From IMG/VR virus record IMGVR_UViG_3300035698_010479, positions 62,001-126,000 of that record: DNA of 64,000 nucleotides; one strand, 5' to 3'. Shown here in pieces: positions 14,244 through 50,482 of this stretch. Below the pieces are notes generated by a model. The model was given only the letters and a program-made list of their open reading frames with translations, was not told the origin of the DNA and did no database searches. The stretch's first letter is position 1. Each line of letters starts with the position of its first letter. Position numbers and translations under genes: made by a program.

Positions 14244-14759
14244 TTAACCCCCATTAGTGAATAATTGTGGATCTTCTGGCATAAAATCAAAAAAAGCTGG
14301 GTCTTGTGCTACCAAATAAGGTGCTGACACAGTCAGGCATCTATGATTCTCGTTAACTAAGTATTTATATTTAGGTTCTTTTCCCCAGATTCTTAATCTC
14401 TCTGTTATTATTTTTCTGCCTAGACCTTGCTGTATCATATTATTGAACTGGCGCTGAAATTTATATCTTATATATCTTATATAACCACTTCGCATGAATT
14501 CCCATATAACCTCATCTTTCTTTTCTATCATGTTGTCTGCAGTTGTAATTACTATGTAGCGATATCCTGTTAACTGTTCATATAATTTCTGCATAGTATA
14601 ACTGTAGTCAAGTGGCTCAATACCTATAATTATTACACCTAATTCAGTAACCTCAAAACAATCCGATAGGTTGGAGCCCAATGGTACCCGTTTATAGGGT
14701 ACCATAAAAGCTGAGAGCATCACAGATATTTCTGTTTGTAACTCCTCTAAACTATACAT
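14244..14759 (-). CDS. hypothetical protein
   Basis: 171-aa ORF coupled to the Clp ATPase gene. Confidence 0.75.
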   Translation of the reverse strand: MYSLEELQTEISVMLSAFMVPYKRVPLGSNLSDCFEVTELGVIIIGIEPLDYSYTMQKLYEQLTGYRYIVITTADNMIEKKDEVIWEFMRSGYIRYIRYKFQRQFNNMIQQGLGRKIITERLRIWGKEPKYKYLVNENHRCLTVSAPYLVAQDPAFFDFMPEDPQLFTNGG

Positions 14760-16695
14760 TAGCTACTTCCTTTAAAGCACCTTTCTGGTCGCTTTCTAGA
14801 TATGTAGGTGCCTTACTTGGTTTTTTGGAGAACTTGAATGTAACACCATTTTTTGCTGTACTTACTGTAACTATGGTATTAATATCTGTAGTACCCTTTA
14901 GTAGTTGTACTGCTAAAGGGGTAGATATATATCGTTCAATAGCTCTCTTTAAAGGTCTAGCACCATACTCTTTAGTAATACCTTTTTCGTATATAAAGTT
15001 ACATACTTTTTTATCAAAAAATATCTCTATATCTTTATATTTAGTTTTATTACTTTGTAAGTTAGTATTTAGTTTAAACAATTCGATATCAATGATTCTG
15101 AAATAGTCTTCTTTTGATAAGTCATTAAAGTAAATTATTTCATCTAATCTATTTAAAAATTCAGGTTTAAATTTCTTTTTTAGTGCTTGTTCCAAAGCTT
15201 GCTCTTTTTTAGCTTCTGTTACTACATTGACATCTCCAAAGCCAATAGTTTTTGATATACTAGCAATATTTTCTACACCTACATTAGATGTCATAATAAT
15301 TACTGTATCCTTAAAAGAAACTTTTGTACCTTTGTTATCTGTTAGTCTACCTTCTTCAAGCACCTGTAAAAGTAGTTGATATATTTTACTTGATGCTTTT
15401 TCTATTTCATCAAAAACTACCACACTAAATGGATTTTCAATTATAGCATTTGTTAAAAGGCCACCATTTTCGTATCCCTGATAACCATTTGGAGATCCTA
15501 TAAGTTTAGAATATTCATGATCTGCTGAATATTCAGAACAATCTATAGTTATCAAGTTATCACGGTCTTTTATCAATTCATTTGCAAGTATTTTTCCTGT
15601 TAAACTCTTCCCACAACCAGTAGATCCGGCAAACAAGAAAGAGCCGATAGGTTTAACTGGATCTTTAAGCCCTACACTAGCACGTTGTATAGCGTCAGTT
15701 AAACTAGCTACAACTTTATCTTGCCCTATAAGGGAGACTTTCATATTTGTAGCTAAATTTAAAAGGTCCTCTTCTGGAACGTCTGCAAAGACTTTCTTTT
15801 TCTTGTCCACTTTATTAGCAAACTGGTCCATAGCAGTAGCACCAGAAGACATAGTTTTCTTACCACTACCGCAATCAGTACAATCAGAAGGTTTTTTATC
15901 TTTGTTAGCTAGCTCCTGAGCATTCTCATAAGTCAGAAAAGGATTACAAGCTTGGCATATATCATATAGTTCTTTCATCAATAGTGGTGGTGATACTCTA
16001 GCTGGTACACCCATATTTTCTAGAACCTGAAACAAAGCTTCAAAGTCTTCGATACATAAAGTAACAACAAAAGTATTAAAGCTAACGCTACTATGAAAAA
16101 ATCTACCATTTATTAATTTACTTAAATCTTGCTCATTAAATACCTTCACAGATACATACCTGCCTATACGTTTCCACCATTTGTCTTTTGTGTTATATAT
16201 AGAATTGGTTGAAGTTTTATCCACAGGATTTCCTTGTTCATCAACAAAGCCATCCGCCAACTCCTTATTATCTGGTATAGTCACATCCGGTATATAGTCC
16301 CAAAGAGGGTTCTCTTCTAACGCTACCACTTCCTCCATATTAGTATCAGTAGTTTTTACTTTCAAAATATGATTTTTATTTATAACAATACTGGAATAAG
16401 CTAAATTTTTATTTTTAGAAAAAATTGCATCCAAGAAATTTGAACGTAATTTAAAAAAATCTAAATTTTTAGATAGTGTTTCGTCGCTTATTTTATGAAG
16501 AATTTGATTAATATTTGCTACACAAGTAGCAATTAAGTAATCATCATATAAGATCTTAGCAACAAGACCATCATCCTTAGCAAAAAAAGTTAGTTTATCT
16601 TCTATATCCTCTGATTTAATTTCTAAAATCAACAGGTTAAAATCTATTAATTCACAATAAACTTCGTGTACTTCGTAGTTAACGTTTTCAGTCAT
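14752..16695 (-). CDS. ClpA/B-type AAA+ ATPase with a single (D2) AAA module and an unfamiliar N-terminal region
   Basis: LIGQD, PIGSFLFAGSTGCGKS, DCSEY, LIGSPNGYQGY, FDEIEK, FKPEFLNRLD, YGARPLKR; no D1 Walker A seen. Confidence 0.88.
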   Translation of the reverse strand: MTENVNYEVHEVYCELIDFNLLILEIKSEDIEDKLTFFAKDDGLVAKILYDDYLIATCVANINQILHKISDETLSKNLDFFKLRSNFLDAIFSKNKNLAYSSIVINKNHILKVKTTDTNMEEVVALEENPLWDYIPDVTIPDNKELADGFVDEQGNPVDKTSTNSIYNTKDKWWKRIGRYVSVKVFNEQDLSKLINGRFFHSSVSFNTFVVTLCIEDFEALFQVLENMGVPARVSPPLLMKELYDICQACNPFLTYENAQELANKDKKPSDCTDCGSGKKTMSSGATAMDQFANKVDKKKKVFADVPEEDLLNLATNMKVSLIGQDKVVASLTDAIQRASVGLKDPVKPIGSFLFAGSTGCGKSLTGKILANELIKDRDNLITIDCSEYSADHEYSKLIGSPNGYQGYENGGLLTNAIIENPFSVVVFDEIEKASSKIYQLLLQVLEEGRLTDNKGTKVSFKDTVIIMTSNVGVENIASISKTIGFGDVNVVTEAKKEQALEQALKKKFKPEFLNRLDEIIYFNDLSKEDYFRIIDIELFKLNTNLQSNKTKYKDIEIFFDKKVCNFIYEKGITKEYGARPLKRAIERYISTPLAVQLLKGTTDINTIVTVSTAKNGVTFKFSKKPSKAPTYLESDQKGALKEVANV

Positions 16696-19422: not shown

Positions 19423-19812
19423 TTATAATAATTTTAAATGTCCAGTAATGGTGTCTATAACCTCAGATTCTGCTGGACCGATAGCTAAACATGTGCGTGT
19501 AGGAATACCGTTAAACTCTGTTTTTCCAGAGTCTGTTATAAGCGAACAAATAAGATTAGCACTCTTTGCCTTATAATGTATAGTTAATAATTCTTCTTCA
19601 GAGTCCACACTTACACATACCTTAGTAAAGGAATTTTCTAACCAACTCAAGGTTTCGTCAGAAAACCAAGGAGGTACATCAGCTGTAACACATGTGGTAT
19701 AATCTAATTCTTTTAAAATATTAGCTAGGCTGGCATGGCAGCCTTGTGCCACCATTTTTCCTTTACGCATGTTTAAATCTTTACGCATGACTATAACTTG
19801 CTTGGTATTCAT
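19423..19812 (-). CDS. pth2: peptidyl-tRNA hydrolase type 2
   Basis: KQVIVMRKDLNMRKGKMVAQGCHAS, KVCVSV, DSGKTEF, TCLAIGP, ITGHLKLL. Confidence 0.92.
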   Translation of the reverse strand: MNTKQVIVMRKDLNMRKGKMVAQGCHASLANILKELDYTTCVTADVPPWFSDETLSWLENSFTKVCVSVDSEEELLTIHYKAKSANLICSLITDSGKTEFNGIPTRTCLAIGPAESEVIDTITGHLKLL

Positions 19813-20043: not shown

Positions 20044-20220
20044 TCATCTATGGTAAGTAACGTCCGTAAGCTTATCTTTTATCTTCTTGATGGTTGCTTT
20101 CTTAATAACAAACCCATGTCCTGAGCACCTATCACAGCTAAAAAGTCTATCATCCATATTGATTTCACCTGTACCGTTACACATATAACATATTGTAAAA
20201 CTTTCTTTTATTTTTAACAT
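20044..20220 (-). CDS. DnaJ-type zinc-finger small protein
   Basis: CYMCNGTG, CDRCSGHG; true start ATG 20220 after AGGAG (the upstream part of the listed ORF is the tRNA). Confidence 0.7.
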   Translation of the reverse strand: MLKIKESFTICYMCNGTGEINMDDRLFSCDRCSGHGFVIKKATIKKIKDKLTDVTYHR

Positions 20221-20246
20221 TATTATACTCCTTATATTAATATGTT

Positions 20247-20321
20247 TGTTCCTAGTGAGAATCGAACTCACAACGAAACGCAGGTTTAGAATCTGCCGCT
20301 CTACCACTGAGCTATAGGAAC
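20247..20321 (-). tRNA. amber suppressor tRNA (anticodon CUA)
   Basis: GTTCCTA-TA-GCTC AGTGGTA GAGC-G-GCAGA TTCTAAA CCTGC-GTTTCGTT-GTGAG TTCGATT CTCAC-TAGGAAC-A. Confidence 0.85.
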
Positions 20322-20323
20322 AT

Positions 20324-20355
20324 ATGAGGCTTATATTGTTAGGTATAAGCCTCAT
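20324..20355 (-). terminator. 12-bp hairpin immediately 5' of the suppressor tRNA
   Basis: ATGAGGCTTATA / TATAAGCCTCAT inverted repeat. Confidence 0.55.
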
Positions 20356-20359
20356 GTTT

Positions 20360-20605
20360 TTAAACCTCCAATTCCTCACCCATAATAAGTGTAACAACAT
20401 AACGCTGTTTCTTCATAAAATCAACATAACTTAGTGCTTCATTTAATAATGTGAACTCCTTAAAATCTTTACCAGAACTATCATTACAGTATGAGTCAAC
20501 GCTATATACATAATAACAATGGTGTACTTCGTCACCCCAGCCCTGAACTATCTTGTTAAGTTCTCTAATCTTATCCTTTTTATTTTCATCCATAATTATA
20601 ATCAA
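20360..20605 (-). CDS. hypothetical protein
   Basis: 81-aa ORF. Confidence 0.6.
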   Translation of the reverse strand: MIIIMDENKKDKIRELNKIVQGWGDEVHHCYYVYSVDSYCNDSSGKDFKEFTLLNEALSYVDFMKKQRYVVTLIMGEELEV

Positions 20606-20607
20606 CC

Positions 20608-20904
20608 TTAAAGTAGACGCATACTCTCGAAGAATTCATTACCACCCAAACTTGCTATAGCAGTAAGTTGATTTCCTATATCAGGTTCTTTAAAACTTAC
20701 ATGTGGTATATTACTCCAGTTTAGATCATTTGTCAAGCGCTTTAATTCACCCTCATTATTTACTTTGAGATAGACCAACGTACCGTTATCCCAGTTTGTA
20801 AGTCTGTTATTTAATAAGTATTCAGCCAAAGCATGACCAGCTTGAACGGCTTGCTGAGACTTAGATAGATCTTTACGTGTTATTACATATAGTTTATGCT
20901 GCAT
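20608..20904 (-). CDS. Pth2-fold phage protein (peptidyl-tRNA hydrolase-like)
   Basis: KLYVITRKDL, QAVQAGHA, FKEPDIGNQLTAIA. Confidence 0.72.
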   Translation of the reverse strand: MQHKLYVITRKDLSKSQQAVQAGHALAEYLLNNRLTNWDNGTLVYLKVNNEGELKRLTNDLNWSNIPHVSFKEPDIGNQLTAIASLGGNEFFESMRLL

Positions 20905-24698: not shown

Positions 24699-25142
24699 TT
24701 ATTCACACCAGTTTTTTTCTTTTGTCCCACCATTATACTTAACGGCTAGGCCTTTGTCAAGTAAAATAGTAGCTAAGTCACCTTCGGCTGTTAAAACTTC
24801 TGCGACAATTCTAAAATATTTTCCTCGTCTAGTATTAAGAAGTGATACCTTGGTATGATCTCGCAGTATAACATATACAGCCTCTTTAGCCGCTAATGCA
24901 AGTTGATGCTCCTTTTCACATTTACTACGCATCTCAGGTGTATCAATACCAAATACACGTACTGATATTTTATAGCCAAATAACTCTGGTATGTCATTTA
25001 TATTTACAGTTAAAGTATCTCCATCATAATTACTAATAACTTCTACATCATAAAAATTTTCATATGTTTTTTCTGACGCATTACTATTATCATAACTACA
25101 AAAAGTACATAACAATAAAAATGATACTAATAGGCTTTTCAT
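24699..25142 (-). CDS. thermonuclease (SNase-like) with signal peptide
   Basis: YDGDT, VRVFGIDTPE, GKYFRIVA, GLAVKYNGG. Confidence 0.88.
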   Translation of the reverse strand: MKSLLVSFLLLCTFCSYDNSNASEKTYENFYDVEVISNYDGDTLTVNINDIPELFGYKISVRVFGIDTPEMRSKCEKEHQLALAAKEAVYVILRDHTKVSLLNTRRGKYFRIVAEVLTAEGDLATILLDKGLAVKYNGGTKEKNWCE

Positions 25143-25562: not shown

Positions 25563-25600
25563 AAAAAAGGCTACTAGGAAATCGTTTCCCTAGCAGCCTT
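25563..25600 (-). terminator. rho-independent terminator
   Basis: GGCTGCTAGG...CCTAGTAGCC stem followed by a T6 run on the - strand. Confidence 0.65.
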
Positions 25601-25793
25601 TAGTAAGTATATATTTACTATAGTTTATCTAGACAAACGAGTCCCTTTGCTTACTCTCAATAGAGTAGCTCTCGTACATTTTAAAACTTTCTGATTTTTC
25701 GTTTGTCATTTTGTTTGTTCCTAATTAAATTTTAAATACAGTATTTATAAACTATGTATAATATCAAAATTAACCCAAGGCCTTTTAGAAGTC

Positions 25794-26130: not shown

Positions 26131-26742
26131 TTATCTAATAGGTCTTTTCCTTTTCTTATCACTACTTCCGACCTTAATATGACAATCTAAACAACCCTCG
26201 TGTATCATTTTATCTTCTTTAGCGAACAACACTTGTCCTTTTGAGTGGGGGTAGTGACAGATATTACAAGTTACCTTATCATCTTTATACCATACCAGAA
26301 GATTATTAGAGCCAACCAATAGCTCTTTGGTCATAGGATCTACTGCATTTCCACCAGTTACTGGATCAATTACCTTTCTCCCTATAAACCTACCTGGGGG
26401 GTTGTATTGTGTACAAATAACGTTATCATGTTTAACTATAGCGGTTGTATTAAAAGGGTCATGGCAAGTCATACAAGACGAGTAGCCACTCTTTCTGGCC
26501 CTATCCGGGTGTCCTGCTGCGTGAAGGTTACCTACACCTTGTATATAAGTAACAATAGGCACTACTTCTGGGCAATCTTTACATATAATCGGATCTGGAC
26601 ATACCATTTCAATACACTTACTAGGTTGGGTTAACACTAAAGGCCCACCCTCCTCAGCGCTGAACCACACCTTATCCGCAGCAGCTGCGGCCGTAATGGT
26701 AAAACATAAACACATTATAAGTATTACTAATATCTTCTTCAT
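26131..26742 (-). CDS. secreted three-heme cytochrome c
   Basis: Sec signal peptide (MKKILVILIM...AAAAA); CMTCH, CNICH(YPH), CLDCH heme-binding motifs plus spare His residues. Confidence 0.85.
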   Translation of the reverse strand: MKKILVILIMCLCFTITAAAAADKVWFSAEEGGPLVLTQPSKCIEMVCPDPIICKDCPEVVPIVTYIQGVGNLHAAGHPDRARKSGYSSCMTCHDPFNTTAIVKHDNVICTQYNPPGRFIGRKVIDPVTGGNAVDPMTKELLVGSNNLLVWYKDDKVTCNICHYPHSKGQVLFAKEDKMIHEGCLDCHIKVGSSDKKRKRPIR

Positions 26743-28018: not shown

Positions 28019-28579
28019 TTAAATTACAGTTATACTTAAAATTTTTACAGCTAAAGTAAGGACAGTAACTACAAGTGTAGCTACTTGACTCATATTATTA
28101 CTTGTTGGGTTATCAAGTAACTTATCAATTTCTGAATAAGCTAGTATAGCTTGGTCATCAAAACTTTTAAACATGTTTTGGTCTTCGCCGTTAAAAGAAT
28201 CTAAATGTACTATAACAATTTTTCTGGCTTTTGCATAGCTAGTCTTAGTTATATCCCACATAAGACTTATATCGTATGTGTCAAAAGTAACAGTACCCAT
28301 GTTAATAATAGTGTTGTACTTCAATAATAAAAGCTTTATAGCCGCCTCTACTTCTAGTAGATCGTTCCATTCACTAGCTGTAAAAATATTATCTTGCTCT
28401 TGTTTATATGCCAATAAGTATTTAACTTTTGTATATGTAGTATCTAAAGTATTTATATACATAGACAATGTGTTAGTATTCACAACATACTTCTGCGGTT
28501 GAGTAGTAGTACAACCACCCAGCAATAACATAATGGATAACATAAAACCAATAATTATTCTATTTGTATTGTACTGCAT
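28019..28579 (-). CDS. lipoprotein
   Basis: Signal peptide with lipobox LLGG-C; hydrophobic C-terminal helix. Confidence 0.72.
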   Translation of the reverse strand: MQYNTNRIIIGFMLSIMLLLGGCTTTQPQKYVVNTNTLSMYINTLDTTYTKVKYLLAYKQEQDNIFTASEWNDLLEVEAAIKLLLLKYNTIINMGTVTFDTYDISLMWDITKTSYAKARKIVIVHLDSFNGEDQNMFKSFDDQAILAYSEIDKLLDNPTSNNMSQVATLVVTVLTLAVKILSITVI

Positions 28580-29169
28580 TACTCGATTACACCTGGGTCC
28601 GTTGCTGGTATAGTTTCTGTAATACTATTTGTTGTTTGTGAACCATCACCAGAAGTTATATGACTATCAGTGGCAGTGTTATGTGTACCTGCACCGTTAA
28701 TACCTGCTACAGCAATATCTTTGGCGTTATTGGATTGAGTAATTCCTAAAGCTACACCAGCTAAACCAAGTAAAGTTCCTCCCATCTTTTGTACAGATTC
28801 TCCTACAGTCTCAGGCGCTTCGATCTTACCAAGAGTTACTTTAGGTGTGGTAGCATCAGCCAAAGCTCTTGTAGTCAACCACTTGTCTTCCAACACCATA
28901 AGCATAAGCGGTGTAATAACATCATCCGTTTTGTCTGGTGTTGCTGCTACTGCTTGTAGTGCATTACTAGTGAGTAGTAGCATCTTTTCCTCGTGTTTTA
29001 GTTGTGCAGCTTCTCTTTTGGCTGATTCTTTATCGGCCATAAGTTGAAGTGTTACATTTTGTTCTTTTACAGCATTGGCGTAGCTAGTATATTCTTTACC
29101 AGCACAACCAACTAAAGACGTACATAAAGACAGTACGATTAATATTGCAAACACCTTTCTAATTTTCAT
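28579..29169 (-). CDS. lipoprotein
   Basis: Signal peptide with lipobox LVG-C; coiled coil. Confidence 0.72.
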   Translation of the reverse strand: MKIRKVFAILIVLSLCTSLVGCAGKEYTSYANAVKEQNVTLQLMADKESAKREAAQLKHEEKMLLLTSNALQAVAATPDKTDDVITPLMLMVLEDKWLTTRALADATTPKVTLGKIEAPETVGESVQKMGGTLLGLAGVALGITQSNNAKDIAVAGINGAGTHNTATDSHITSGDGSQTTNSITETIPATDPGVIE

Positions 29170-31352: not shown

Positions 31353-33209
31353 TCAAACAGAAGCTTGTGACTCTTCAGGGCCTTGTTGTGGTTGTTCGGC
31401 TGGTTGTGCTTGTGCGTATAGTTTTTCTGATATAGGGTGAAATGCTAAGTTAAGTTCCTCAATCTTTTTAGTAAGTTCTTCTACAGAGACATCTTTAGAA
31501 ATAAGTTCACGAATCTCTGATATTTTAATGGCTAGGTCGTCTTTTTCCTCTTCAGAAACCTTATCAGAGTTATCCTTAATAGTTTTCTCCATTTGATAAG
31601 CGGTATTTTCGGCTTGGTTTTTTGCTTCAATTAAACTACGTTTAGCTTTATCGGCCTCTGCATGTTCCTCTGCTTCTGCTACCATACGGGCAATATCATC
31701 TTTAGAAAGCCCTGAAGAAGATTCAATTTTTATTGACTGCTCTTTACCTGTACCTAAATCTTTTGCTGACACGGTTAAAATACCATTAGCGTCAATATTA
31801 AAACTAACTTCAACCTGTGGTACACCTCTTGGCGCTGGTGGGATACCTACCAAATCAAATCTGCCCAATGTTTTATTATCCTGCGCCATTTCACGCTCGC
31901 CCTGAATAACGTGTATGGAGACAGCGTTTTGATTGTCAACAGCTGTGCTAAAAACCTGGGTTCTCAATACAGGTATTGACGTATTTTTATCTATAATTCT
32001 GGTAGCTACACCACCTAGAGTTTCAATGCTAAAAGAAAGCGCCGTAACATCAAGTAGTAATACATCAGTAGTAACGCCTGCAATAATACTTGCCTGAATA
32101 GCAGCACCCTGTGCTACTACTTCATCAGGATTTACTGATTTATTTAACTTTTTATTAAAAAAATCTTCAACCACTTTTTGTACAGCAGGTATACGTGTAG
32201 ATCCACCCACTAAAATAATCTCATCAATACTATCTTTGGTTAGATGAGCATCATTTAACACGGTCTTACAAAGAACTAAGATTTTATCTACTAAATCAGA
32301 TGTCATACTATCAAACCTAGACCTAGTTAACTTAGTATTTAGATGTTTTGGACCAGAAGCATCCGCTGTGATGAATGGTATATTAATAGTTACCTCCATA
32401 GCAGAAGATAGCTCTTTCTTGGCTTTCTCAGCTTCATCTTTCAGGCGCTGAAGGGCCATATTATCATTACGCAGGTTAATACCTTCATTCTTTTTGAAGT
32501 CGTCTACCAACCAATTAACGATAACTTGGTCAAAATCAGTACCTCCAAGATAACTATTGCCGAATGTACCTATAACTTCAACAACATTATCACCTAAATC
32601 TAATATAGATGTATCACTGGTACCTGCACCAATGTCTACGATCATGACCTTTTCTTCTTTATCGCCTTCAAAGCCGTAAGCAAGTGCAGCAGCTGTAGGT
32701 TCATTAATTATACGTTTTATATCTAGCCCAGCTATCTTACCTGCATCTTTTGTAGCCTGTCTTTGGGCATCTGTAAAATACGCAGGTACAGTAACAACTG
32801 CTTCTGTTACTGTTTCACCTAAGTAATCCTCAGCGTATTTCTTCATCTCTGCTAATACAGCTGCAGATATTTCTACAGGTGACATTAATTTACCATCAAT
32901 ATTAATTAATACTTCACCGGAGGGACCCTCACTTAATTTAAAAGGTGCTATCTTTATAAAATCTTGAACTTCCTTATCCTTATATAAGCGGCCTATAAGT
33001 CTTTTTGCTTCATAGACTGTTCTTTCTGAGTTGGTGACAGCCTGTCGTTTAGCTGCACCACCTACTAATTTAGTGTCATTAGTAAATGCAACTACACTTG
33101 GGGTAGTTGAAGTACCATCACTAGAAAAAATAATTTTTGGTGTACCACTTTCCATAACTGAAACACATGAAAAGCCTGTTCCAAGGTCTATTCCAACAAT
33201 CTTTCCCAT
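31353..33209 (-). CDS. dnaK: Hsp70 chaperone DnaK
   Basis: [50 protein letters not shown]. Confidence 0.97.
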
Positions 33210-46420: not shown

Positions 46421-48148
46421 TTAACTACATCTCGAATAGCCACAGCCCTCGTTAACACACTTAATGCACCCCTCGGCATTTACCAGAGAAGGTTCTCCAC
46501 AAGTTGGGCACTTGTTATCATCCCCAACTAAAGCAAAAGCATCTACGTATTTACTTAAAACTCTAGAAATAGCTGTACTAAAATCAGAAATACTGCCATT
46601 TGTTTTTTTAAGTTGCTCTACTATATACTTTGGTAAAGCCCCATGTCTTAAAGCCAAGCTAAGTAATCTAGTCATACCCTTCTGCCCATCAGTCATTAAA
46701 ATAGCAGCAAGGTCTTTGTAAATAACTGGAGACCTTCGTATAACTACATCTAATTCGTATTTACCTTTACCTTGTTTTCTTATTATACCACTATTACAAG
46801 TTTTAGGCAAGTACAAATCTTCAGATGTGCCACAAAAAACCTCATAAGCTTTACCATCAAGTAGCCCAACAAGAACCGTCCACATTTCACCTTTTATAGA
46901 TGTATAAAAAATATCACAAGGTAACTCTTTAGGTCGCTTTGGTGCACAATTTGGAACTATACAAAAAGGTCTTGCCTCATCCTTACAGCCTGTTGCTGAC
47001 TTCTTCTCAAAGTTAGCCTCACTTGTTTTAGGATCTTCGAAAAGTAAAATACCCTCACGCGAACCATCGACATATACAGACACTGCTCTAACCCCGTGAT
47101 TATAAGCCTCCATATAGATAGTTTCTACATCCTTAACCGTAGCTGTAGCAGGCAAATTGTATGTACAACTAATAGCTGCATCTACCCACTTGTATACATT
47201 TCCCATTAATTTAATTTTCTGTAACGGGTCAATGTGATGAGCGGGTTTAAAAAAACCTTTTGGCAAATTTTTATTTATAATAGCTACCAAACCCAAACCT
47301 ATAGTTCCATCCTCATCCAAAACAGACCCAGGAAAAGCATCCAAGATCATATAATCACTACTACTTGGGTCGAGTTTACCAAGAACATATTGTTTTATTT
47401 TATCTGGTATAATAAAATAATGAGTATATTTTCCTTTGTCTATTGCTCTTGTCCTTCTCCAATAATACGGGCCTGGAAAAGGTTCTACACCAGATGAAAA
47501 ACAAGGTGTAGGAAAAGTACTAGACAATGACCCAGTAGGTGCTATAGACATATGGGCCATATTACGCATATGAGTTACTTTAGTATAGTCACCGCCGAAT
47601 AGCTCATCCACCACGTTCTTAAAATACGAAGAACTCATAAGCGCTTTAGGGCTACTTATCATCTCAAATGCTGGTGCATTACCTTTCTCTTTACCTAACT
47701 CTATTGACGCCTTAAATACCTCACATGAGTACCGCTTAAAAAATTCTCCTACATTCTTAATAGCATCATCAGAGTCATAGGGTAGGTCTTGCTTAAGTAA
47801 CCAACCATGTATGTTAGTAATACCAAGCCCCAGTTCTCTGGTCTGTTCCAAGATCCACGCTTGTTCTTTTAAGGGTGATAATTTATGGTATGCTTCATAA
47901 CTAACAACATTGTCCGATAGTCTTACAATATACGGAACAAGGAACGCTAGCTCCTGCGTATACTCTTCTATATCAATTGAAAACATTGCTTGGTTCGGTG
48001 AAAGTAAATTACATACACCATACGGTGGTAAACTTTTTTCCGAATTTTTTACTAACACACCTTCTACATAATAATTATGGTTATCTTGTACCTCAATATT
48101 ATATGTAGGCTTCTTTTCACTATTGTTTACTATACTAATTATTTTCAT
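46421..48148 (-). CDS. nrdJ: class II ribonucleotide reductase, C-terminal half, with N-terminal split-intein IntC
   Basis: IntC ...YNIEVQDNHNYYVEGVLVKN then SEKSLPPYGVCNL, LGITN, SIAPTGSLS, TSCPD-like region and terminal Zn ribbon (CPTCG...GCIKC). Confidence 0.9.
   Translation of the reverse strand: MKIISIVNNSEKKPTYNIEVQDNHNYYVEGVLVKNSEKSLPPYGVCNLLSPNQAMFSIDIEEYTQELAFLVPYIVRLSDNVVSYEAYHKLSPLKEQAWILEQTRELGLGITNIHGWLLKQDLPYDSDDAIKNVGEFFKRYSCEVFKASIELGKEKGNAPAFEMISSPKALMSSSYFKNVVDELFGGDYTKVTHMRNMAHMSIAPTGSLSSTFPTPCFSSGVEPFPGPYYWRRTRAIDKGKYTHYFIIPDKIKQYVLGKLDPSSSDYMILDAFPGSVLDEDGTIGLGLVAIINKNLPKGFFKPAHHIDPLQKIKLMGNVYKWVDAAISCTYNLPATATVKDVETIYMEAYNHGVRAVSVYVDGSREGILLFEDPKTSEANFEKKSATGCKDEARPFCIVPNCAPKRPKELPCDIFYTSIKGEMWTVLVGLLDGKAYEVFCGTSEDLYLPKTCNSGIIRKQGKGKYELDVVIRRSPVIYKDLAAILMTDGQKGMTRLLSLALRHGALPKYIVEQLKKTNGSISDFSTAISRVLSKYVDAFALVGDDNKCPTCGEPSLVNAEGCIKCVNEGCGYSRCS
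48044..48148 (-). mobile_element. split intein C-terminal fragment (35 aa)
   Basis: Intein block F/G ending in Asn, followed by Ser+1. Confidence 0.85.
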
Positions 48149-49163
48149 TATATAATCCTTCTATTTTTTGTATATACAACTCTATACTACCATAATATTT
48201 AATAATTGATTTATAACTAAATCTAGAATTAGGTCTACAATGCATTTCTTTATATAAAATTATAGTAGTCTCATCAAGTTTACCATATAATGCGTAAAGC
48301 TTTAAACCGTGTTTAATAAGTAAACTATACATTATTTTTTTCTTATCTTCTTCAGTATGCAGATGTCCGCTAGTACCATTTAATTTAGCTTTATAGTTAC
48401 ACCACGAACCCTTACAACTTGCTTTTTTGCAGTATTGCTTGTCTAATAAATCATATGTGTCTACAACATCTCCACAAAATATACATATATTTTGTTTCTT
48501 AACACCATATTTTTGTACACGTAAAATTTCCTGGTGTTTAATCTGTGCAGTACTTATACTAATTCTAAGTTCTGGCCTAGTTTTATGTGTAATTTGCATA
48601 GCAATACTACGCTTTTTACGAACCTCTGGTCTGCTTTGACACTCTAACATAAGCTTGGTGTGTGCTTCTAAACGCTCCTCGGAAAATTTAATACCGTATG
48701 ATGGGTTATTACTTCCAGACATATCATATGAATCAGACCGATCTATATACTCCAGCAAACAGCTTTTAAAGTCTTTGTGCTGTTTATAATAAGCTCTATT
48801 GTACGTTAAAGCGTTGTAGTTAATACCTAATTCCAAAAAATATTTTTTATACAGCGATAAATACGTAGTACATTCTTTAATAGAGTCTTTTATTTCAATA
48901 ATACTATTTAATATTGTATAAGTATTATCAATATAAATGAAAAAATCAGGTTTATAGGTACGATTATCAATAACATATACATGTTGTTCCATCAAGTAAT
49001 AAACATGTTGCTTATCTAAAAGTAAGCACTGTATTTTTTCTAACATTGACCTACAAAAAACACGTTTATTATCCCATGTGGTATGGTAACCGCAATAACC
49101 TCTTCCATTTTTAAAAGAACTTTTTTTTTGACTTCCTCCAACCGACATATTTACATCCTCCAT
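48135..49163 (-). CDS. free-standing homing-endonuclease-like protein (PD-(D/E)xK/TnsA-like domain plus NUMOD3-like motif)
   Basis: RSMLEK...YKPDF...IEIK; GSNNPSYGIKFSEE; located between the two nrdJ halves. Confidence 0.7.
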   Translation of the reverse strand: MEDVNMSVGGSQKKSSFKNGRGYCGYHTTWDNKRVFCRSMLEKIQCLLLDKQHVYYLMEQHVYVIDNRTYKPDFFIYIDNTYTILNSIIEIKDSIKECTTYLSLYKKYFLELGINYNALTYNRAYYKQHKDFKSCLLEYIDRSDSYDMSGSNNPSYGIKFSEERLEAHTKLMLECQSRPEVRKKRSIAMQITHKTRPELRISISTAQIKHQEILRVQKYGVKKQNICIFCGDVVDTYDLLDKQYCKKASCKGSWCNYKAKLNGTSGHLHTEEDKKKIMYSLLIKHGLKLYALYGKLDETTIILYKEMHCRPNSRFSYKSIIKYYGSIELYIQKIEGLYNENN

Positions 49164-49225
49164 AATTAATAAGTGTTATAGCATAGTAGAGTTAGTTAAA
49201 TATAGGGATGTAATTAATAGTATTA

Positions 49226-49534
49226 TTAAAGTTCCATCAAGTCATCTTCAAGAGTTAAATCTTTAGCCTGTACAATTCCTCTATTAGATGTGTAAAACTT
49301 ATGATCTGGTGTACATTCTATAGAGAGCCCACTACCTAGGTTTAAGGTTAGTGTTTTTACAGGTATACCCGCTTCACGAGCAAACACATCCACTATTGGC
49401 TTTAATTCATCAAGATTAGTACTTGTATTTCTGGATAAAGCCATGAAATCTTCCCCATCTAAAATGCGCTTTATAATATCCTTAATCAGTATATTGCCTT
49501 TATCTGTAAGTATATGATTTTCATCAGTAAAACA
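49226..49534 (-). mobile_element. split intein N-terminal fragment (102 aa)
   Basis: Block A CFTDENHILT, block B IECTPDHKFYT, ending AKDLTLEDDLMEL-stop. Confidence 0.88.
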
Positions 49535-50482
49535 GCAGGCGTTTGTAGAAATTATTTTAAATCTTGCATCACCAGTATCCAAATATATCTGATGAACCAT
49601 GGAACCTTCCCTTAGAAGGTCTATATATTGTACACCAGGTTCTGCGTGTTTAAACGCTTGTTCCGCTATTAAGTCGAATAACTCCGTAGCTTTTATTGTT
49701 TTAGATATACGCTTATATTTACTTCCTTCCTCAAACTCAAAAAATAATTCCCAACTAGCATCGGCCTTCACAGCTTCGATAAATTTATTAGAAACCTGCA
49801 CAGAAATATTGGCATTTTCCAAAACACCTTTTTCTGCTTTTGCTCGTACAAACTCATATATATCTGGGTGATGATCTTTTAAACTAACCAATATAGCAGG
49901 CTTTCTACCTTTCTGCCCCACCCATTCACCATTATCTACAAGTTTACATATCCATGGTACAGCACCTGTGGATTCTTCTGCAGCATTATTTACTGGAGCA
50001 CCTCTAGGGCGGAGTACTGAAGCATCAAAACCTAAACCCTGTCTAAAAGCTGCACACTTCATTATATCATAGTCACATTTAGAAATACTTTCCAAGCTAT
50101 CACCAGATAGAGGTAATGTGGTACAATTTAATAAGGATTTCAAGCTTGTAGCACCTACACCAGCAAGAACGCTTCCCCCTGGTCTAAACCAACCAAGCCA
50201 CATGAGTGCAAACCACCTATTACTGTATAGATCTTGCAGTTCTTTGGTTTTCTCCATAGTGGCTAACCCTGAAGATACACGCCAAAACACATCAGCAGGA
50301 GTTTCTATTTTGATATAAGGAGTGTCGGTGTCTGTTATTACTTTACCGTATTCATCCCATTTTGTACAATATTTAGTATCAAACATTTTATGAGCGTACT
50401 CATCTTCTGTAAAGTACTCTCTGCTGGAAATGTTCTTTACATTTTCGTACTTAATTAAATCTAACATCTCAATTGATAACAT
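49226..50482 (-). CDS. nrdJ: class II ribonucleotide reductase, N-terminal half, with C-terminal split-intein IntN
   Basis: FRPGGSVL, LLNC, RQGLGFDASVLRP, NANISV, AEPG, TNAC then intein CFT... Confidence 0.9.
   Translation of the reverse strand: MLSIEMLDLIKYENVKNISSREYFTEDEYAHKMFDTKYCTKWDEYGKVITDTDTPYIKIETPADVFWRVSSGLATMEKTKELQDLYSNRWFALMWLGWFRPGGSVLAGVGATSLKSLLNCTTLPLSGDSLESISKCDYDIMKCAAFRQGLGFDASVLRPRGAPVNNAAEESTGAVPWICKLVDNGEWVGQKGRKPAILVSLKDHHPDIYEFVRAKAEKGVLENANISVQVSNKFIEAVKADASWELFFEFEEGSKYKRISKTIKATELFDLIAEQAFKHAEPGVQYIDLLREGSMVHQIYLDTGDARFKIISTNACCFTDENHILTDKGNILIKDIIKRILDGEDFMALSRNTSTNLDELKPIVDVFAREAGIPVKTLTLNLGSGLSIECTPDHKFYTSNRGIVQAKDLTLEDDLMEL

What the first reader, a model, noticed from the sequence alone, without database searches (positions are those of the whole stretch)
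26131..26742. Phage-encoded secreted three-heme cytochrome c
Seen: a Sec signal peptide, three CxxCH motifs (one as CHxPH), spare His residues as possible distal ligands, and an extra N-terminal Cys-rich stretch (CIEMVCPDPIICKDC). Known: multiheme c-type cytochromes need host Ccm/Ccs maturation and are typical of anaerobic respirers such as Desulfobacterota. Inference: an auxiliary metabolic gene that rewires periplasmic electron transfer during infection; it also hints at the host group.
Basis: partly seen in the sequence, partly recalled or inferred. Interest (0 to 1): 0.8.

Follow-up and report, generated by a model that had tools for sequence, protein, structure and literature searches.

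The report
Phage-only family of small multihaem cytochromes
A 228-kb phage from an Antarctic lake encodes an exported three-haem cytochrome c that belongs to a rare, undescribed family found so far only in phage genomes, often next to their lysis genes, so it is not an ordinary gene borrowed from a host.

Summary
Window 26131..26742 (minus strand) is a complete 203-aa gene with a Shine-Dalgarno site, a Sec-type signal peptide and three canonical CxxCH motifs. It passes Pfam's Paired_CXXCH_1 cut-off.

The window is part of a 228-kb IMG/VR phage contig from the Ace Lake (Antarctica) co-assembly. The gene sits between the same phage genes in related jumbo phages from Crystal Geyser groundwater, so it is not a chimeric host fragment.

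- **Family.** An exhaustive scan of 1.84 billion representative proteins found only about 18 relatives. Every relative with readable context (about 15 loci, GC 33-65%) lies in a phage. None turned up in 185,579 species' genomes, GenBank phages or plasmids.
- **Conservation.** All nine haem-binding residues and His74 and His78 are invariant. His166, His181 and a lone Cys110 are at least 90% conserved.
- **Context.** In four lineages the gene sits inside the lysis cassette.
- **Divergence.** The cytochrome is the most divergent gene at its locus: 41% identity against a median of about 70% for its neighbours.

Best reading: a host-matured periplasmic electron-transfer protein carried as a phage moron. 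The "rewires respiration" role is plausible but untested, and nothing points to a Desulfobacterota host. The host remains unknown.

The parts
26131..26742 (-). Complete coding sequence of the 203-aa exported three-haem c-type cytochrome, with a TAA stop at 26131..26133.
   Evidence: ORF list and sequence. Pfam PF09699 above its cut-off. 100% match to the IMG/VR phage contig.
26747..26751 (-). Shine-Dalgarno GGAGG, 4 nt upstream of the ATG.
   Evidence: Read directly from the sequence.
26677..26742 (-). Residues 1-22: Sec-type signal peptide, with a predicted AxA cleavage before ADKVW.
   Evidence: Sequence. Hydrophobic segment 1-19. Modelled as a helix at residues 2-18. The same layout occurs in all family members.
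26533..26676 (-). Residues 23-70: a short N-terminal segment (DKVWFSAEEG..LVL) followed by a variable Cys/Pro-rich linker holding C43, C48, C54 and C57.
   Evidence: Alignments A1 and A3. pLDDT falls below 50 at residues 44-54. Length, Pro content and Cys number vary across the family.
26461..26475 (-). Haem-binding motif 1, CMTCH (residues 90-94). The invariant H74 and H78 lie upstream of it.
   Evidence: Codons checked. Invariant in 23 of 23 sequences.
26275..26445 (-). Residues 100-156: a conserved beta-rich insert between haems 1 and 2 (pattern iCSQY.F ... DP.TG....DPvSG..ivsGG). It contains the lone near-invariant Cys110, whose codon is 26413..26415.
   Evidence: The 10-residue blocks over this stretch have pLDDT 85-89, with strands predicted. 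Conservation shown. Cysteine bookkeeping.
26254..26268 (-). Haem-binding motif 2, CNICH (residues 159-163), followed by the conserved P165 and H166.
   Evidence: Forms part of the Paired_CXXCH_1 match at residues 158-189.
26179..26193 (-). Haem-binding motif 3, CLDCH (residues 184-188), preceded by the conserved H181-x-G183.
25566..25601 (-). Terminator-like hairpin (16 pairs plus a T-run) after the downstream 98-aa Ig-like gene. It probably ends the transcription unit that contains the cytochrome gene.
   Evidence: Consensus scan only.

Best explanation
The gene encodes a small soluble multihaem c-type cytochrome made by a jumbo phage during infection.

**Shown from sequence**
- A Sec signal peptide, then a variable Cys/Pro-rich linker, then a core of about 125 residues.
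- The core carries three CxxCH sites. H74 and H78 are invariant. H166, H181 and a lone Cys110 are each conserved in at least 90% of members.
- The last two haem sites form the 'paired CXXCH' module shared with MtrA/DmsE, NrfB, NrfA and NrfH.

**Inferred**
- The unfolded chain is exported by the host Sec system.
- The host's cytochrome c maturation machinery (Ccm or Ccs) attaches three haems in the periplasm. No such genes were seen in this window.
- The haems are mostly bis-His ligated and packed closely enough to pass electrons along the protein.
- The holoprotein exchanges electrons with host periplasmic redox partners.

It belongs to a rare family seen so far only in phage genomes of several unrelated types. 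It has been exchanged among them and evolves faster than its neighbours. It is therefore best described as a phage moron acting in the host envelope, not as a copy of a host respiratory gene. Which host pathway it feeds or drains is unknown.
For: - **Motifs and domain.** Three canonical CxxCH motifs. PF09699 is above its gathering score for the window protein and is matched by 22 of 23 relatives. TIGR03508 (DmsE/MtrA) is weakly matched by 20 of 23. A profile search of PDB sequences hits only the paired-CXXCH region of MtrA (6r2q_A), NrfA and NrfH.
- **Purifying selection on haem residues.** All 9 CxxCH residues plus H74 and H78 are invariant across 23 sequences whose mean column identity is 24%.
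- **Viral setting of the window gene.** The window matches a 228-kb IMG/VR contig at 100%. Its other genes include DNA polymerase A, a clamp loader, ribonucleotide reductase, thymidylate synthase, RNA ligase, DnaK, a baseplate-like protein and tRNAs. The locus is syntenic in L002/L016, L005 and L010/L019.
- **Rarity.** Only 19 hits among 1.84 billion representative proteins.
- **Phage contexts of relatives.** L012 has terminase, portal and holin. L013 has DnaB, primase and ligase. L015 and L028 have SU10-type portal, adaptor and capsid genes. L027 has a portal. L020 has a tail protein and an integrase. L022 has PolA and a primase. L029 is a VirSorter contig. L030/31 have an endolysin. The P0001 contig has RecA and SbcCD-like genes.
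- **Absence elsewhere.** No relative in 185,579 species' genomes, in 50,697 GenBank phage records or in plasmids.
- **Fast evolution and exchange.** The cytochrome is 41% identical to its L002 counterpart, while its neighbours are 42-88% identical. In the tree the window allele is sister to P0001 rather than to the syntenic L002 allele, with 99/97 support.
Against: - There is no experimental evidence for haem attachment, expression or any redox partner.
- The host is unknown, so the presence of Ccm or Ccs cannot be verified.
Foldseek found no match.
- Four conserved histidines plus a conserved unpaired Cys is more than three bis-His haems need. This hints at something beyond plain electron shuttling.
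- The repeated placement inside lysis cassettes is not predicted by a purely metabolic role.
- The searches of cellular genomes relied on short peptide patterns and could have missed divergent cellular relatives.
Confidence: 0.55

Rival explanations
1. Lysis-linked redox module. The cytochrome is made late, together with holin, endolysin and spanin. In the periplasm it couples the host's respiratory or redox state to lysis. It could do this by draining or sustaining electron flow and hence the proton-motive force that holins sense, or by thiol/redox control of a secreted endolysin through its free Cys.
For: In four different phage lineages the gene sits inside or directly beside lysis genes, and the endolysin types differ between them.
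- L012: holin (phrog_3427 / GTA_holin_3TM), then the cytochrome.
- L011/L020: GH108-type endolysin motif, then the cytochrome, then a 2-3-TM protein, then an integrase.
- L021-24: a TM protein, then the cytochrome, then a 2-TM protein, then an Rz-like spanin.
- L030/31: an endolysin-like protein (phrog_894), then a 62-aa TM protein, then the cytochrome, then a 2-TM protein, then a lipoprotein.

In the window, small TM proteins and a lipoprotein with a C-terminal TM segment lie just upstream. A conserved unpaired Cys110 sits in an oxidising compartment.
Against: - Lysis cassettes and integrase-proximal sites are classic moron insertion spots, so adjacency need not mean function.
- In other lineages the gene lies between portal and scaffold genes (L027, L028), or among early or unknown genes (L013, L015, L029 and the jumbo phages).
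- To my knowledge no lysis regulator is a cytochrome.
- No endolysin was recognised near the window gene.
Confidence: 0.2
2. Catalytic cytochrome with a His/Cys-ligated haem. Cys110 would be an axial ligand or active-site thiol, as in TsdA, SoxA or DsrJ. The protein would then process a sulfur compound (thiosulfate, polysulfide or sulfide) in the periplasm of a sulfur-cycling host.
For: - Cys110 is kept in 22 of 23 members.
- It is the only unpaired non-haem Cys of the core.
- It is kept even in P0002, which has no N-terminal cysteines to pair with it.
- It lies in the best-modelled, most conserved insert.
- The source sites, Ace Lake's anoxic zone and Crystal Geyser, host sulfur cycling (plus my own knowledge).
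Against: - Four conserved histidines already suffice for three bis-His haems.
- P0013 and the deletion variant P0019 lack the Cys.
- No member matched a Sox, Tsd or Dsr model in NCBIfam at E <= 0.01.
- No partner sulfur genes lie nearby.
Confidence: 0.1
3. Cargo released by lysis, or a polymerising extracellular cytochrome. The protein would act outside the cell after lysis, for example as a matrix or nanowire-like electron conduit, with the spare histidine ligating a haem of a neighbouring subunit.
For: - There is one more conserved His than bis-His ligation of three haems needs.
- Placement in late or lysis modules resembles toxin cargo genes of lambdoid phages (plus my own knowledge).
- Linkers of very variable length, up to about 150-300 residues of VPGPEV-type repeats in P0013 and P0014, suggest a spacer function.
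Against: The only matches to filament cytochromes are non-significant: OmcS 6ef8 at E 5.8 and 9yuq at E 3.7. There is no structural evidence.
Confidence: 0.05
4. Artefact. The gene is either a host fragment joined to a phage contig by mis-assembly, or a secreted Cys-rich protein whose CxxCH motifs are chance and bind no haem.
For: The gene's GC (0.40) and GC3 (0.33) are the highest among its neighbours, whose GC3 runs 0.17-0.31.
Against: - The same locus with the same flanking genes appears in independent assemblies from Utah groundwater.
- Phage genes lie on both sides.
- No shuffle out of 200,000 reaches 3 motifs.
- The motifs are invariant in 23 homologues at 30-50% identity.
- The protein passes the Pfam gathering score.
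Confidence: 0.03

Closest known systems
Paired-CXXCH multihaem modules of MtrA/DmsE, NrfB, NrfA and NrfH (Pfam PF09699, TIGR03508)
   Same: Residues 158-189 (CxxCH-x-P-H ... H-x-G-CxxCH) match this module. 22 of 23 family members hit PF09699, and 20 of 23 weakly hit the DmsE/MtrA model. The best PDB sequence match is MtrA 6r2q_A. It therefore probably works the same way, as closely packed low-spin haems passing electrons in the periplasm.
   Different: - It has 3 haems rather than 4-10.
- Scores are far below the family cut-offs: 19 bits against 192 for TIGR03508.
- Haem 1, the beta-rich insert of about 55 residues with a lone Cys, and the Cys/Pro-rich linker have no counterpart.
- No porin or reductase partner gene is present, and the gene is carried by phages.
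Cytochrome c7 / PpcA-type periplasmic trihaem cytochromes (PF14522)
   Same: Both are soluble, Sec-exported three-haem c-type cytochromes of the class III superfamily. 12 of 23 family members weakly match PF14522, and the language-model look-alikes are c7/c3 clusters.
   Different: The window protein itself does not match PF14522 at E <= 0.01. Its mature size is about 180 residues against about 70. It has the extra insert and linker. No cellular orthologues were found.
Phage-borne c-type cytochrome genes already reported: soxD in sulfur-AMG phages (PMC8190135) and a NapC/NirT-family multihaem cytochrome in amoC-phages (bioRxiv 10.64898/2026.06.18.733297)
   Same: Both are c-type cytochrome genes carried on phage genomes and interpreted as modulating host energy metabolism.
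   Different: Those genes group with, or are annotated after, homologues from their hosts and sit with pathway partners such as soxC. This family has no detectable host counterpart and no pathway partner. It recurs in unrelated phage types and often in lysis cassettes.
His/Cys-ligated haem cytochromes (DsrJ, TsdA, SoxA); cited from my own knowledge, not tested by alignment
   Same: A small periplasmic multihaem protein with a conserved cysteine not accounted for by haem attachment or an obvious disulfide. DsrJ is also trihaem.
   Different: No sequence-model match. There are enough histidines for all-His ligation. The Cys is absent from two members.
Multihaem cytochromes on archaeal extrachromosomal elements (Borg-like elements of Methanoperedens; PMC13444090)
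   Same: Multihaem cytochrome genes carried by a mobile element rather than by the chromosome.
   Different: Those are large, host-like cytochromes for extracellular electron transfer, carried on archaeal elements. This is a small family specific to tailed phages of bacteria.

Membership tests
Multihaem c-type cytochrome (class III-like, Pfam Paired_CXXCH_1 PF09699) | Two or more CxxCH haem-attachment motifs. | tested here: met
   Three motifs, at residues 90-94, 159-163 and 184-188. They are invariant in 23 of 23 homologues.
Multihaem c-type cytochrome (class III-like, Pfam Paired_CXXCH_1 PF09699) | Profile match at or above the curated cut-off. | tested here: met
   23.1 bits against a gathering score of 20.6. 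22 of 23 relatives also match.
Multihaem c-type cytochrome (class III-like, Pfam Paired_CXXCH_1 PF09699) | Export to the compartment where haem is attached (Sec signal). | tested here: met
   An n-h-c signal peptide with an AxA site, no RR motif and no canonical lipobox. Judged by sequence inspection; no dedicated predictor was available.
Multihaem c-type cytochrome (class III-like, Pfam Paired_CXXCH_1 PF09699) | One distal ligand available per haem. | tested here: met
   H74 and H78 are invariant. H166 and H181 are conserved in at least 90% of members. Which residue ligates which haem could not be assigned.
Multihaem c-type cytochrome (class III-like, Pfam Paired_CXXCH_1 PF09699) | Covalently bound haem and redox activity. 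| not testable with these tools
   Needs expression with Ccm or Ccs, haem staining, mass spectrometry and spectroscopy.
MtrA/DmsE decahaem family (TIGR03508) | Ten haems and a whole-protein score above 192.2 bits. | tested here: not met
   3 haems and 19.1 bits. Only residues 154-196 align.
Cytochrome c7 (PF14522 / NF043011) | A compact trihaem domain of about 70 residues matching the c7 profile. | tested here: not met
   The window protein gives no hit at E <= 0.01. The mature protein is about 180 residues and carries a beta-rich insert.
NapC/NirT/NrfH quinol dehydrogenases | An N-terminal membrane anchor plus four haems, with a profile match. | tested here: not met
   A cleavable signal peptide with an AxA site and three haems. 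The NrfH model is hit weakly by only 3 of 23 relatives.
Classical phage auxiliary metabolic gene | Lies in a bona fide viral genome with viral genes on both sides. | tested here: met
   A 228-kb IMG/VR contig with phage genes across the window and synteny in related phages.
Classical phage auxiliary metabolic gene | Derived from, and recognisably homologous to, a host metabolic gene of known pathway. | tested here: not met
   No cellular relative in the scans of 185,579 species' genomes. All relatives with readable context are phage-borne. The pattern-based scans could miss distant relatives.
His/Cys-haem cytochromes (DsrJ, TsdA, SoxA) | A conserved cysteine serving as axial haem ligand. | tested here: inconclusive
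   A lone conserved Cys110 exists. Its ligation state cannot be read from sequence, and no profile match to these families was found.

The most novel reading that the evidence does not exclude
This phage-only cytochrome family is a functional part of lysis cassettes. It would be a periplasmic haem/thiol redox sensor or actuator that ties the moment of lysis, or endolysin activation, to the respiratory state of the infected cell. That would be a new class of lysis regulator. The jumbo-phage copies would be the same device relocated.
Probability: 0.15. Interest if true: 0.85.

Novelty: new variant of a known kind. Interest (0 to 1): 0.66.

Why it matters
Phage genes for c-type cytochromes are rare, and those reported so far are copies of host genes. 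This one defines a small family that appears to live only in phages and has moved between unrelated phage types infecting hosts of very different GC content. It keeps every haem-binding residue while the rest of the protein diverges quickly, and it repeatedly sits among lysis genes.

If it is an electron carrier, phages of anaerobic or microaerobic environments carry their own periplasmic redox protein rather than a borrowed one. That bears on how infection alters respiration in sulfidic lakes and aquifers. If it is tied to lysis, it would link the cell's redox state to the lysis clock. Either way the protein is small, soluble and easy to express with ccm genes, so both ideas can be tested directly.

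Tried and rejected
- **Close homologue search.** The word-indexed search of 5.8 billion proteins with the single sequence found nothing. Only the exhaustive phmmer scan and profile searches found relatives.
- **GenBank phages and plasmids.** tblastn of three family members against GenBank phages, and of one against plasmids, gave no match. Megablast of 24 kb of the window against phages gave no match.
- **Cellular genomes.** Two pattern scans found no confirmed relative.
- **Structure.** Foldseek of the AlphaFold model against PDB and BFVD gave nothing below E 0.1. The ESM Atlas model is poor (pLDDT 0.36), and its structural neighbours are meaningless.
- **Host prediction.** DnaK and thymidylate synthase look-alikes are uninformative. 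The two papers found for the source metagenomes give only the sample sites, and an Ace Lake virus study does not describe this phage. Relatives' terminase and tail proteins point only loosely to Proteobacteria-type phages.
- **Conserved partner gene.** An all-against-all BLAST of neighbours found none shared across lineages. One membrane protein is shared by the related L013 and L026.
- **TAG read-through.** I checked PolA followed by a downstream ORF, and DHFR followed by NUDIX. Both pairs are separate complete genes.
- **P0017.** This 1451-aa hit is a repeat protein with no CxxCH and was rejected as spurious.
Full report
**1. The observation**

The ORF lies on the minus strand at 26131..26742. 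It encodes 203 residues from an ATG start to a TAA stop, and GGAGG sits 4 nt upstream of the start.

- It has three canonical CxxCH motifs: CMTCH at 90-94, CNICH at 159-163 and CLDCH at 184-188.
- The N-terminus has the usual Sec layout, MKK then a hydrophobic core then AAA|ADKVW. There is no twin-arginine motif and no canonical lipobox.
- The four extra N-terminal cysteines (43, 48, 54, 57) and the spare histidines (74, 78, 105, 166, 181) are there.
- None of 200,000 composition-preserving shuffles gives three motifs. The rest of the window's ORFs hold a single CxxCH between them.
- Pfam Paired_CXXCH_1 scores 23.1 bits against a cut-off of 20.6. NCBIfam gives only weak partial hits to decahaem and hexadecahaem cytochromes over residues 148-202.

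**2. The genome it sits in**

The window matches IMGVR_UViG_3300035698_010479 at 100%. That contig is 228,458 bp long. IMG metagenome 3300035698 is the co-assembly of Ace Lake, Antarctica (PMC8542988).

- The window has a uniform GC of 31-36%.
- It encodes DNA polymerase A, a clamp loader, an intein-split ribonucleotide reductase, thymidylate synthase, DHFR, dUTPase, RNA ligase, PRPP synthetase, DnaK, a Lon-like protease, baseplate-like proteins and glycosyltransferases. ARAGORN calls seven tRNA genes, six of which Rfam confirms at its gathering score, including an amber suppressor.
- The immediate neighbours, in transcription order, are: a phage metallopeptidase-like protein, a methyltransferase-like protein, two lipoproteins (one with a C-terminal TM segment), two small proteins (one with a TM segment), a DUF1353 protein (phrog_1158), the cytochrome, a 98-aa Ig-like protein, a terminator-like hairpin, a tRNA cluster and a secreted SNase-type nuclease.
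- No polytopic membrane protein that could be CcsBA or CcmF is present in the window, so haem attachment would depend on the host.

**3. Not a chimera**

A related jumbo phage from Crystal Geyser groundwater, Utah, carries the same genes in the same order. It appears as L002, from IMG 3300025035 (site identified through PMC10159854), and as L016, a 264-kb contig. The shared order runs DnaK ... metallopeptidase, methyltransferase, two lipoproteins, DUF1353, cytochrome, Ig-like protein, nuclease, glycosyltransferase, radical SAM.

More distant jumbo relatives also keep a cytochrome at the same general locus. These are L005 (234 kb), L010 (152 kb) and L019 (237 kb).

The neighbours are 42-88% identical between the window and L002, with a median of about 70%. 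The cytochrome is only 41% identical, the lowest at the locus.

In a maximum-likelihood tree of the core domain, the window allele is sister to P0001, a seven-haem protein on another phage contig (support 99/97). The syntenic L002 allele falls in a separate five-haem clade (support 98/96). The locus has therefore exchanged alleles. The window copy has probably lost the C-terminal dihaem extension that both neighbouring clades carry.

**4. The family**

- A word-indexed search of 5.8 billion proteins found nothing with the single sequence.
- Exhaustive phmmer over 1.84 billion representatives found 19 hits. Eighteen are family members or fragments, and one is a spurious repeat protein.
- Profile searches and scans of IMG/VR and JGI metagenomes added about a dozen more.
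- In a 23-sequence alignment with mean column identity 24%, the invariant positions are H74, H78, C90, C93, H94, G121, D135, C159, C162, H163, C184, C187 and H188. G71, C110, G130, P136, G145, P165, H166, H181, G183 and D186 are conserved in at least 90%.

The shared architecture has five parts:

- a signal peptide;
- a short N-terminal segment;
- a Cys/Pro-rich linker that varies from about 10 residues to more than 150, with CPxC repeats, poly-Pro or VPGPEV repeats;
- the trihaem core, with a conserved beta-rich insert between haems 1 and 2;
- a conserved VGSxD(L/R) tail.

Some members add one or two C-terminal dihaem modules, giving 5 or 7 haems. Each module brings two histidines.

The core holds exactly one unpaired non-haem cysteine, Cys110. 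It is retained even in P0002, which has no N-terminal cysteines. It is missing only in P0013 and in the deletion variant P0019.

AlphaFold2 with this alignment gives mean pLDDT 74.7 and pTM 0.55, with pLDDT 85-89 in the insert and below 50 in the linker. Foldseek found no match in PDB or BFVD.

**5. Where the family lives**

Every relative with enough flanking DNA is in a phage:

| Locus | Phage features nearby |
|---|---|
| L012 | GpA terminase, Mu-type portal, S49 protease, amidase, holin |
| L013 / L014 | DnaB, primase, ligase, DHFR |
| L015 | small terminase, SU10 portal and adaptor, HNH |
| L028 | scaffold, capsid, SU10 adaptor |
| L027 | portal immediately upstream |
| L011 / L020 | tail protein, endolysin motif, integrase |
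| L021-24 | PolA, primase, Rz-like spanin |
| L029 | VirSorter contig with HNH and dCMP deaminase |
| L030 / 31 | endolysin-like protein and lipoprotein |
| L003 | MUG113 domain |
| P0001 contig | RecA, SbcCD-like |

GC of these loci spans 33-65%. No relative was found in one genome from each of 185,579 bacterial and archaeal species. None was found in 50,697 GenBank phage records or in 72,556 plasmids. The genome scans use short peptide patterns, so divergent cellular relatives could have been missed. Language-model look-alikes are generic bacterial c7/c3/paired-CXXCH clusters.

**6. Lysis-cassette placement**

In four lineages with different endolysin types the gene sits inside the lysis cassette:

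- L012: holin, then the cytochrome.
- L020: a GH108-type endolysin motif, then the cytochrome, then a 2-3-TM protein, then an integrase.
- L021-24: a TM protein, then the cytochrome, then a 2-TM protein, then an Rz-like spanin.
- L030/31: an endolysin-like protein, then a 62-aa TM protein, then the cytochrome, then a 2-TM protein, then a lipoprotein.

Such sites are also common moron insertion points, so the adjacency is suggestive and not proof of function. In the window, the upstream genes are envelope proteins. One has a lipobox plus a C-terminal TM segment, which is the layout of a unimolecular spanin. No endolysin was recognised nearby.

**7. How it most likely works**

*Shown:* a Sec-type signal, three haem-attachment sites under strict purifying selection, enough conserved histidines for bis-His ligation, a paired-CXXCH module of the MtrA/NrfB type, a phage-only distribution and fast divergence.

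*Inferred:* export by Sec, haem attachment by the host's Ccm or Ccs system, close haem packing, and electron exchange with host periplasmic partners.

I put 0.55 on 'periplasmic electron-transfer moron'. I put about 0.2 on a role tied to lysis, 0.1 on a His/Cys-haem catalytic role through Cys110, 0.05 on an extracellular or polymerising role, and 0.03 on an artefact.

**8. Comparison with what is known**

- It works like small periplasmic multihaem cytochromes (c7/PpcA, NrfB, the MtrA module). It is not a member of c7, MtrA/DmsE or NrfH, because the profile scores, haem number or anchor type fail.
- Phage-borne cytochromes have been reported before: soxD (PMC8190135) and a NapC/NirT-family cytochrome in amoC-phages (bioRxiv 10.64898/2026.06.18.733297). 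Those are host-like genes.
- I found no paper describing a phage-specific multihaem family among the 8 full-text searches I ran. The library is incomplete.

**9. Host**

The host is unresolved. A spanin in one relative and the need for periplasmic haem attachment point to diderm hosts that have Ccm or Ccs. Nothing singles out Desulfobacterota. The 33% GC of this phage and the family's wide GC range argue against reading a host group from this gene.

**10. Verdict**

This is a real, well-supported gene: a new, phage-restricted variant of a known protein kind, with an unexplained conserved cysteine and a striking genomic association. Interest 0.66.

Noticed in passing
window 20247..20321 (-): An amber-suppressor tRNA (anticodon CUA). 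ARAGORN calls it 'tRNA-Pyl', and Rfam's tRNA model scores it at 62 bits. It overlaps a probably spurious 118-aa ORF at 20044..20400. TAG still ends 20 of the 91 ORFs of at least 90 aa here, and the two in-frame TAG junctions I checked are separate genes. If TAG is recoded, that happens elsewhere in the 228-kb genome.
   Followed up: partly
window 46421..50482 (-): The ribonucleotide reductase large subunit is split into an N-part of 418 aa (barrel positions 3-213 plus the start of an intein splicing domain), an unassigned 342-aa ORF (48135..49163) and a C-part of 575 aa (barrel positions 224-523). The first two of these ORFs are in different frames. This looks like an intein or homing-element insertion, possibly degenerate.
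   Followed up: partly
window 28019..28579 (-) and 28579..29169 (-): Two adjacent lipoprotein genes with lipoboxes LGGC and LVGC. The 186-aa one also has a C-terminal TM segment at residues 163-181, which is the layout of a unimolecular spanin. It is the second most divergent gene at the locus, 42% identical to its L002 counterpart.
   Followed up: partly
window 24699..25142 (-): A staphylococcal-nuclease-like protein (PF00565, phrog_452) with an N-terminal signal-like segment. It would be a second exported phage protein close to the cytochrome.
   Followed up: no
L002 9028..9909 (+): The Crystal Geyser relative has an extra 293-aa gene inserted between DUF1353 and the cytochrome. Its sequence shows a caspase-like His/Cys dyad pattern (..SGHG.. 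and ..DACHSG..). This rests on motif inspection only, with no profile search.
   Followed up: no
L006-L010 cytochrome genes (for example L010 9989..10843): Near-identical Crystal Geyser alleles differ only in the number of Thr-Pro repeats in the linker before the C-terminal dihaem module (284 against 286 aa). They carry 10 N-terminal cysteines in CPxC-type repeats.
   Followed up: no
P0013, P0014 and P0019 (family members): P0013 and P0014 put about 150-300 residues of VPGPEVIVE-type repeats between the N-terminus and the trihaem core, and P0013 (the only one of the two that was aligned) lacks Cys110. P0019 (123 aa) is a natural variant missing the whole beta-rich insert.
   Followed up: no
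window 26131..26742 compared with its neighbours: The cytochrome gene has the highest GC3 of the genes sampled here, 0.33 against 0.17-0.31. This fits a fairly recent arrival from a higher-GC phage and agrees with the allele replacement seen in the tree.
   Followed up: partly
window 19423..19812 (-) and 20608..20904 (-): Two PTH2-type peptidyl-tRNA hydrolase genes, one full-length and one weaker or shorter, flank the suppressor tRNA region. DnaK (31353..33209) and a Lon-like protease (14752..16695) are also present.
   Followed up: no
L013 4294..5064 and L026 1..699: A signal-peptide-bearing membrane protein (weak DUF5658 hit) lies next to the cytochrome in two related phages, downstream in one and upstream in the other. 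It is the only candidate partner gene seen, and it is confined to that sub-lineage.
   Followed up: no
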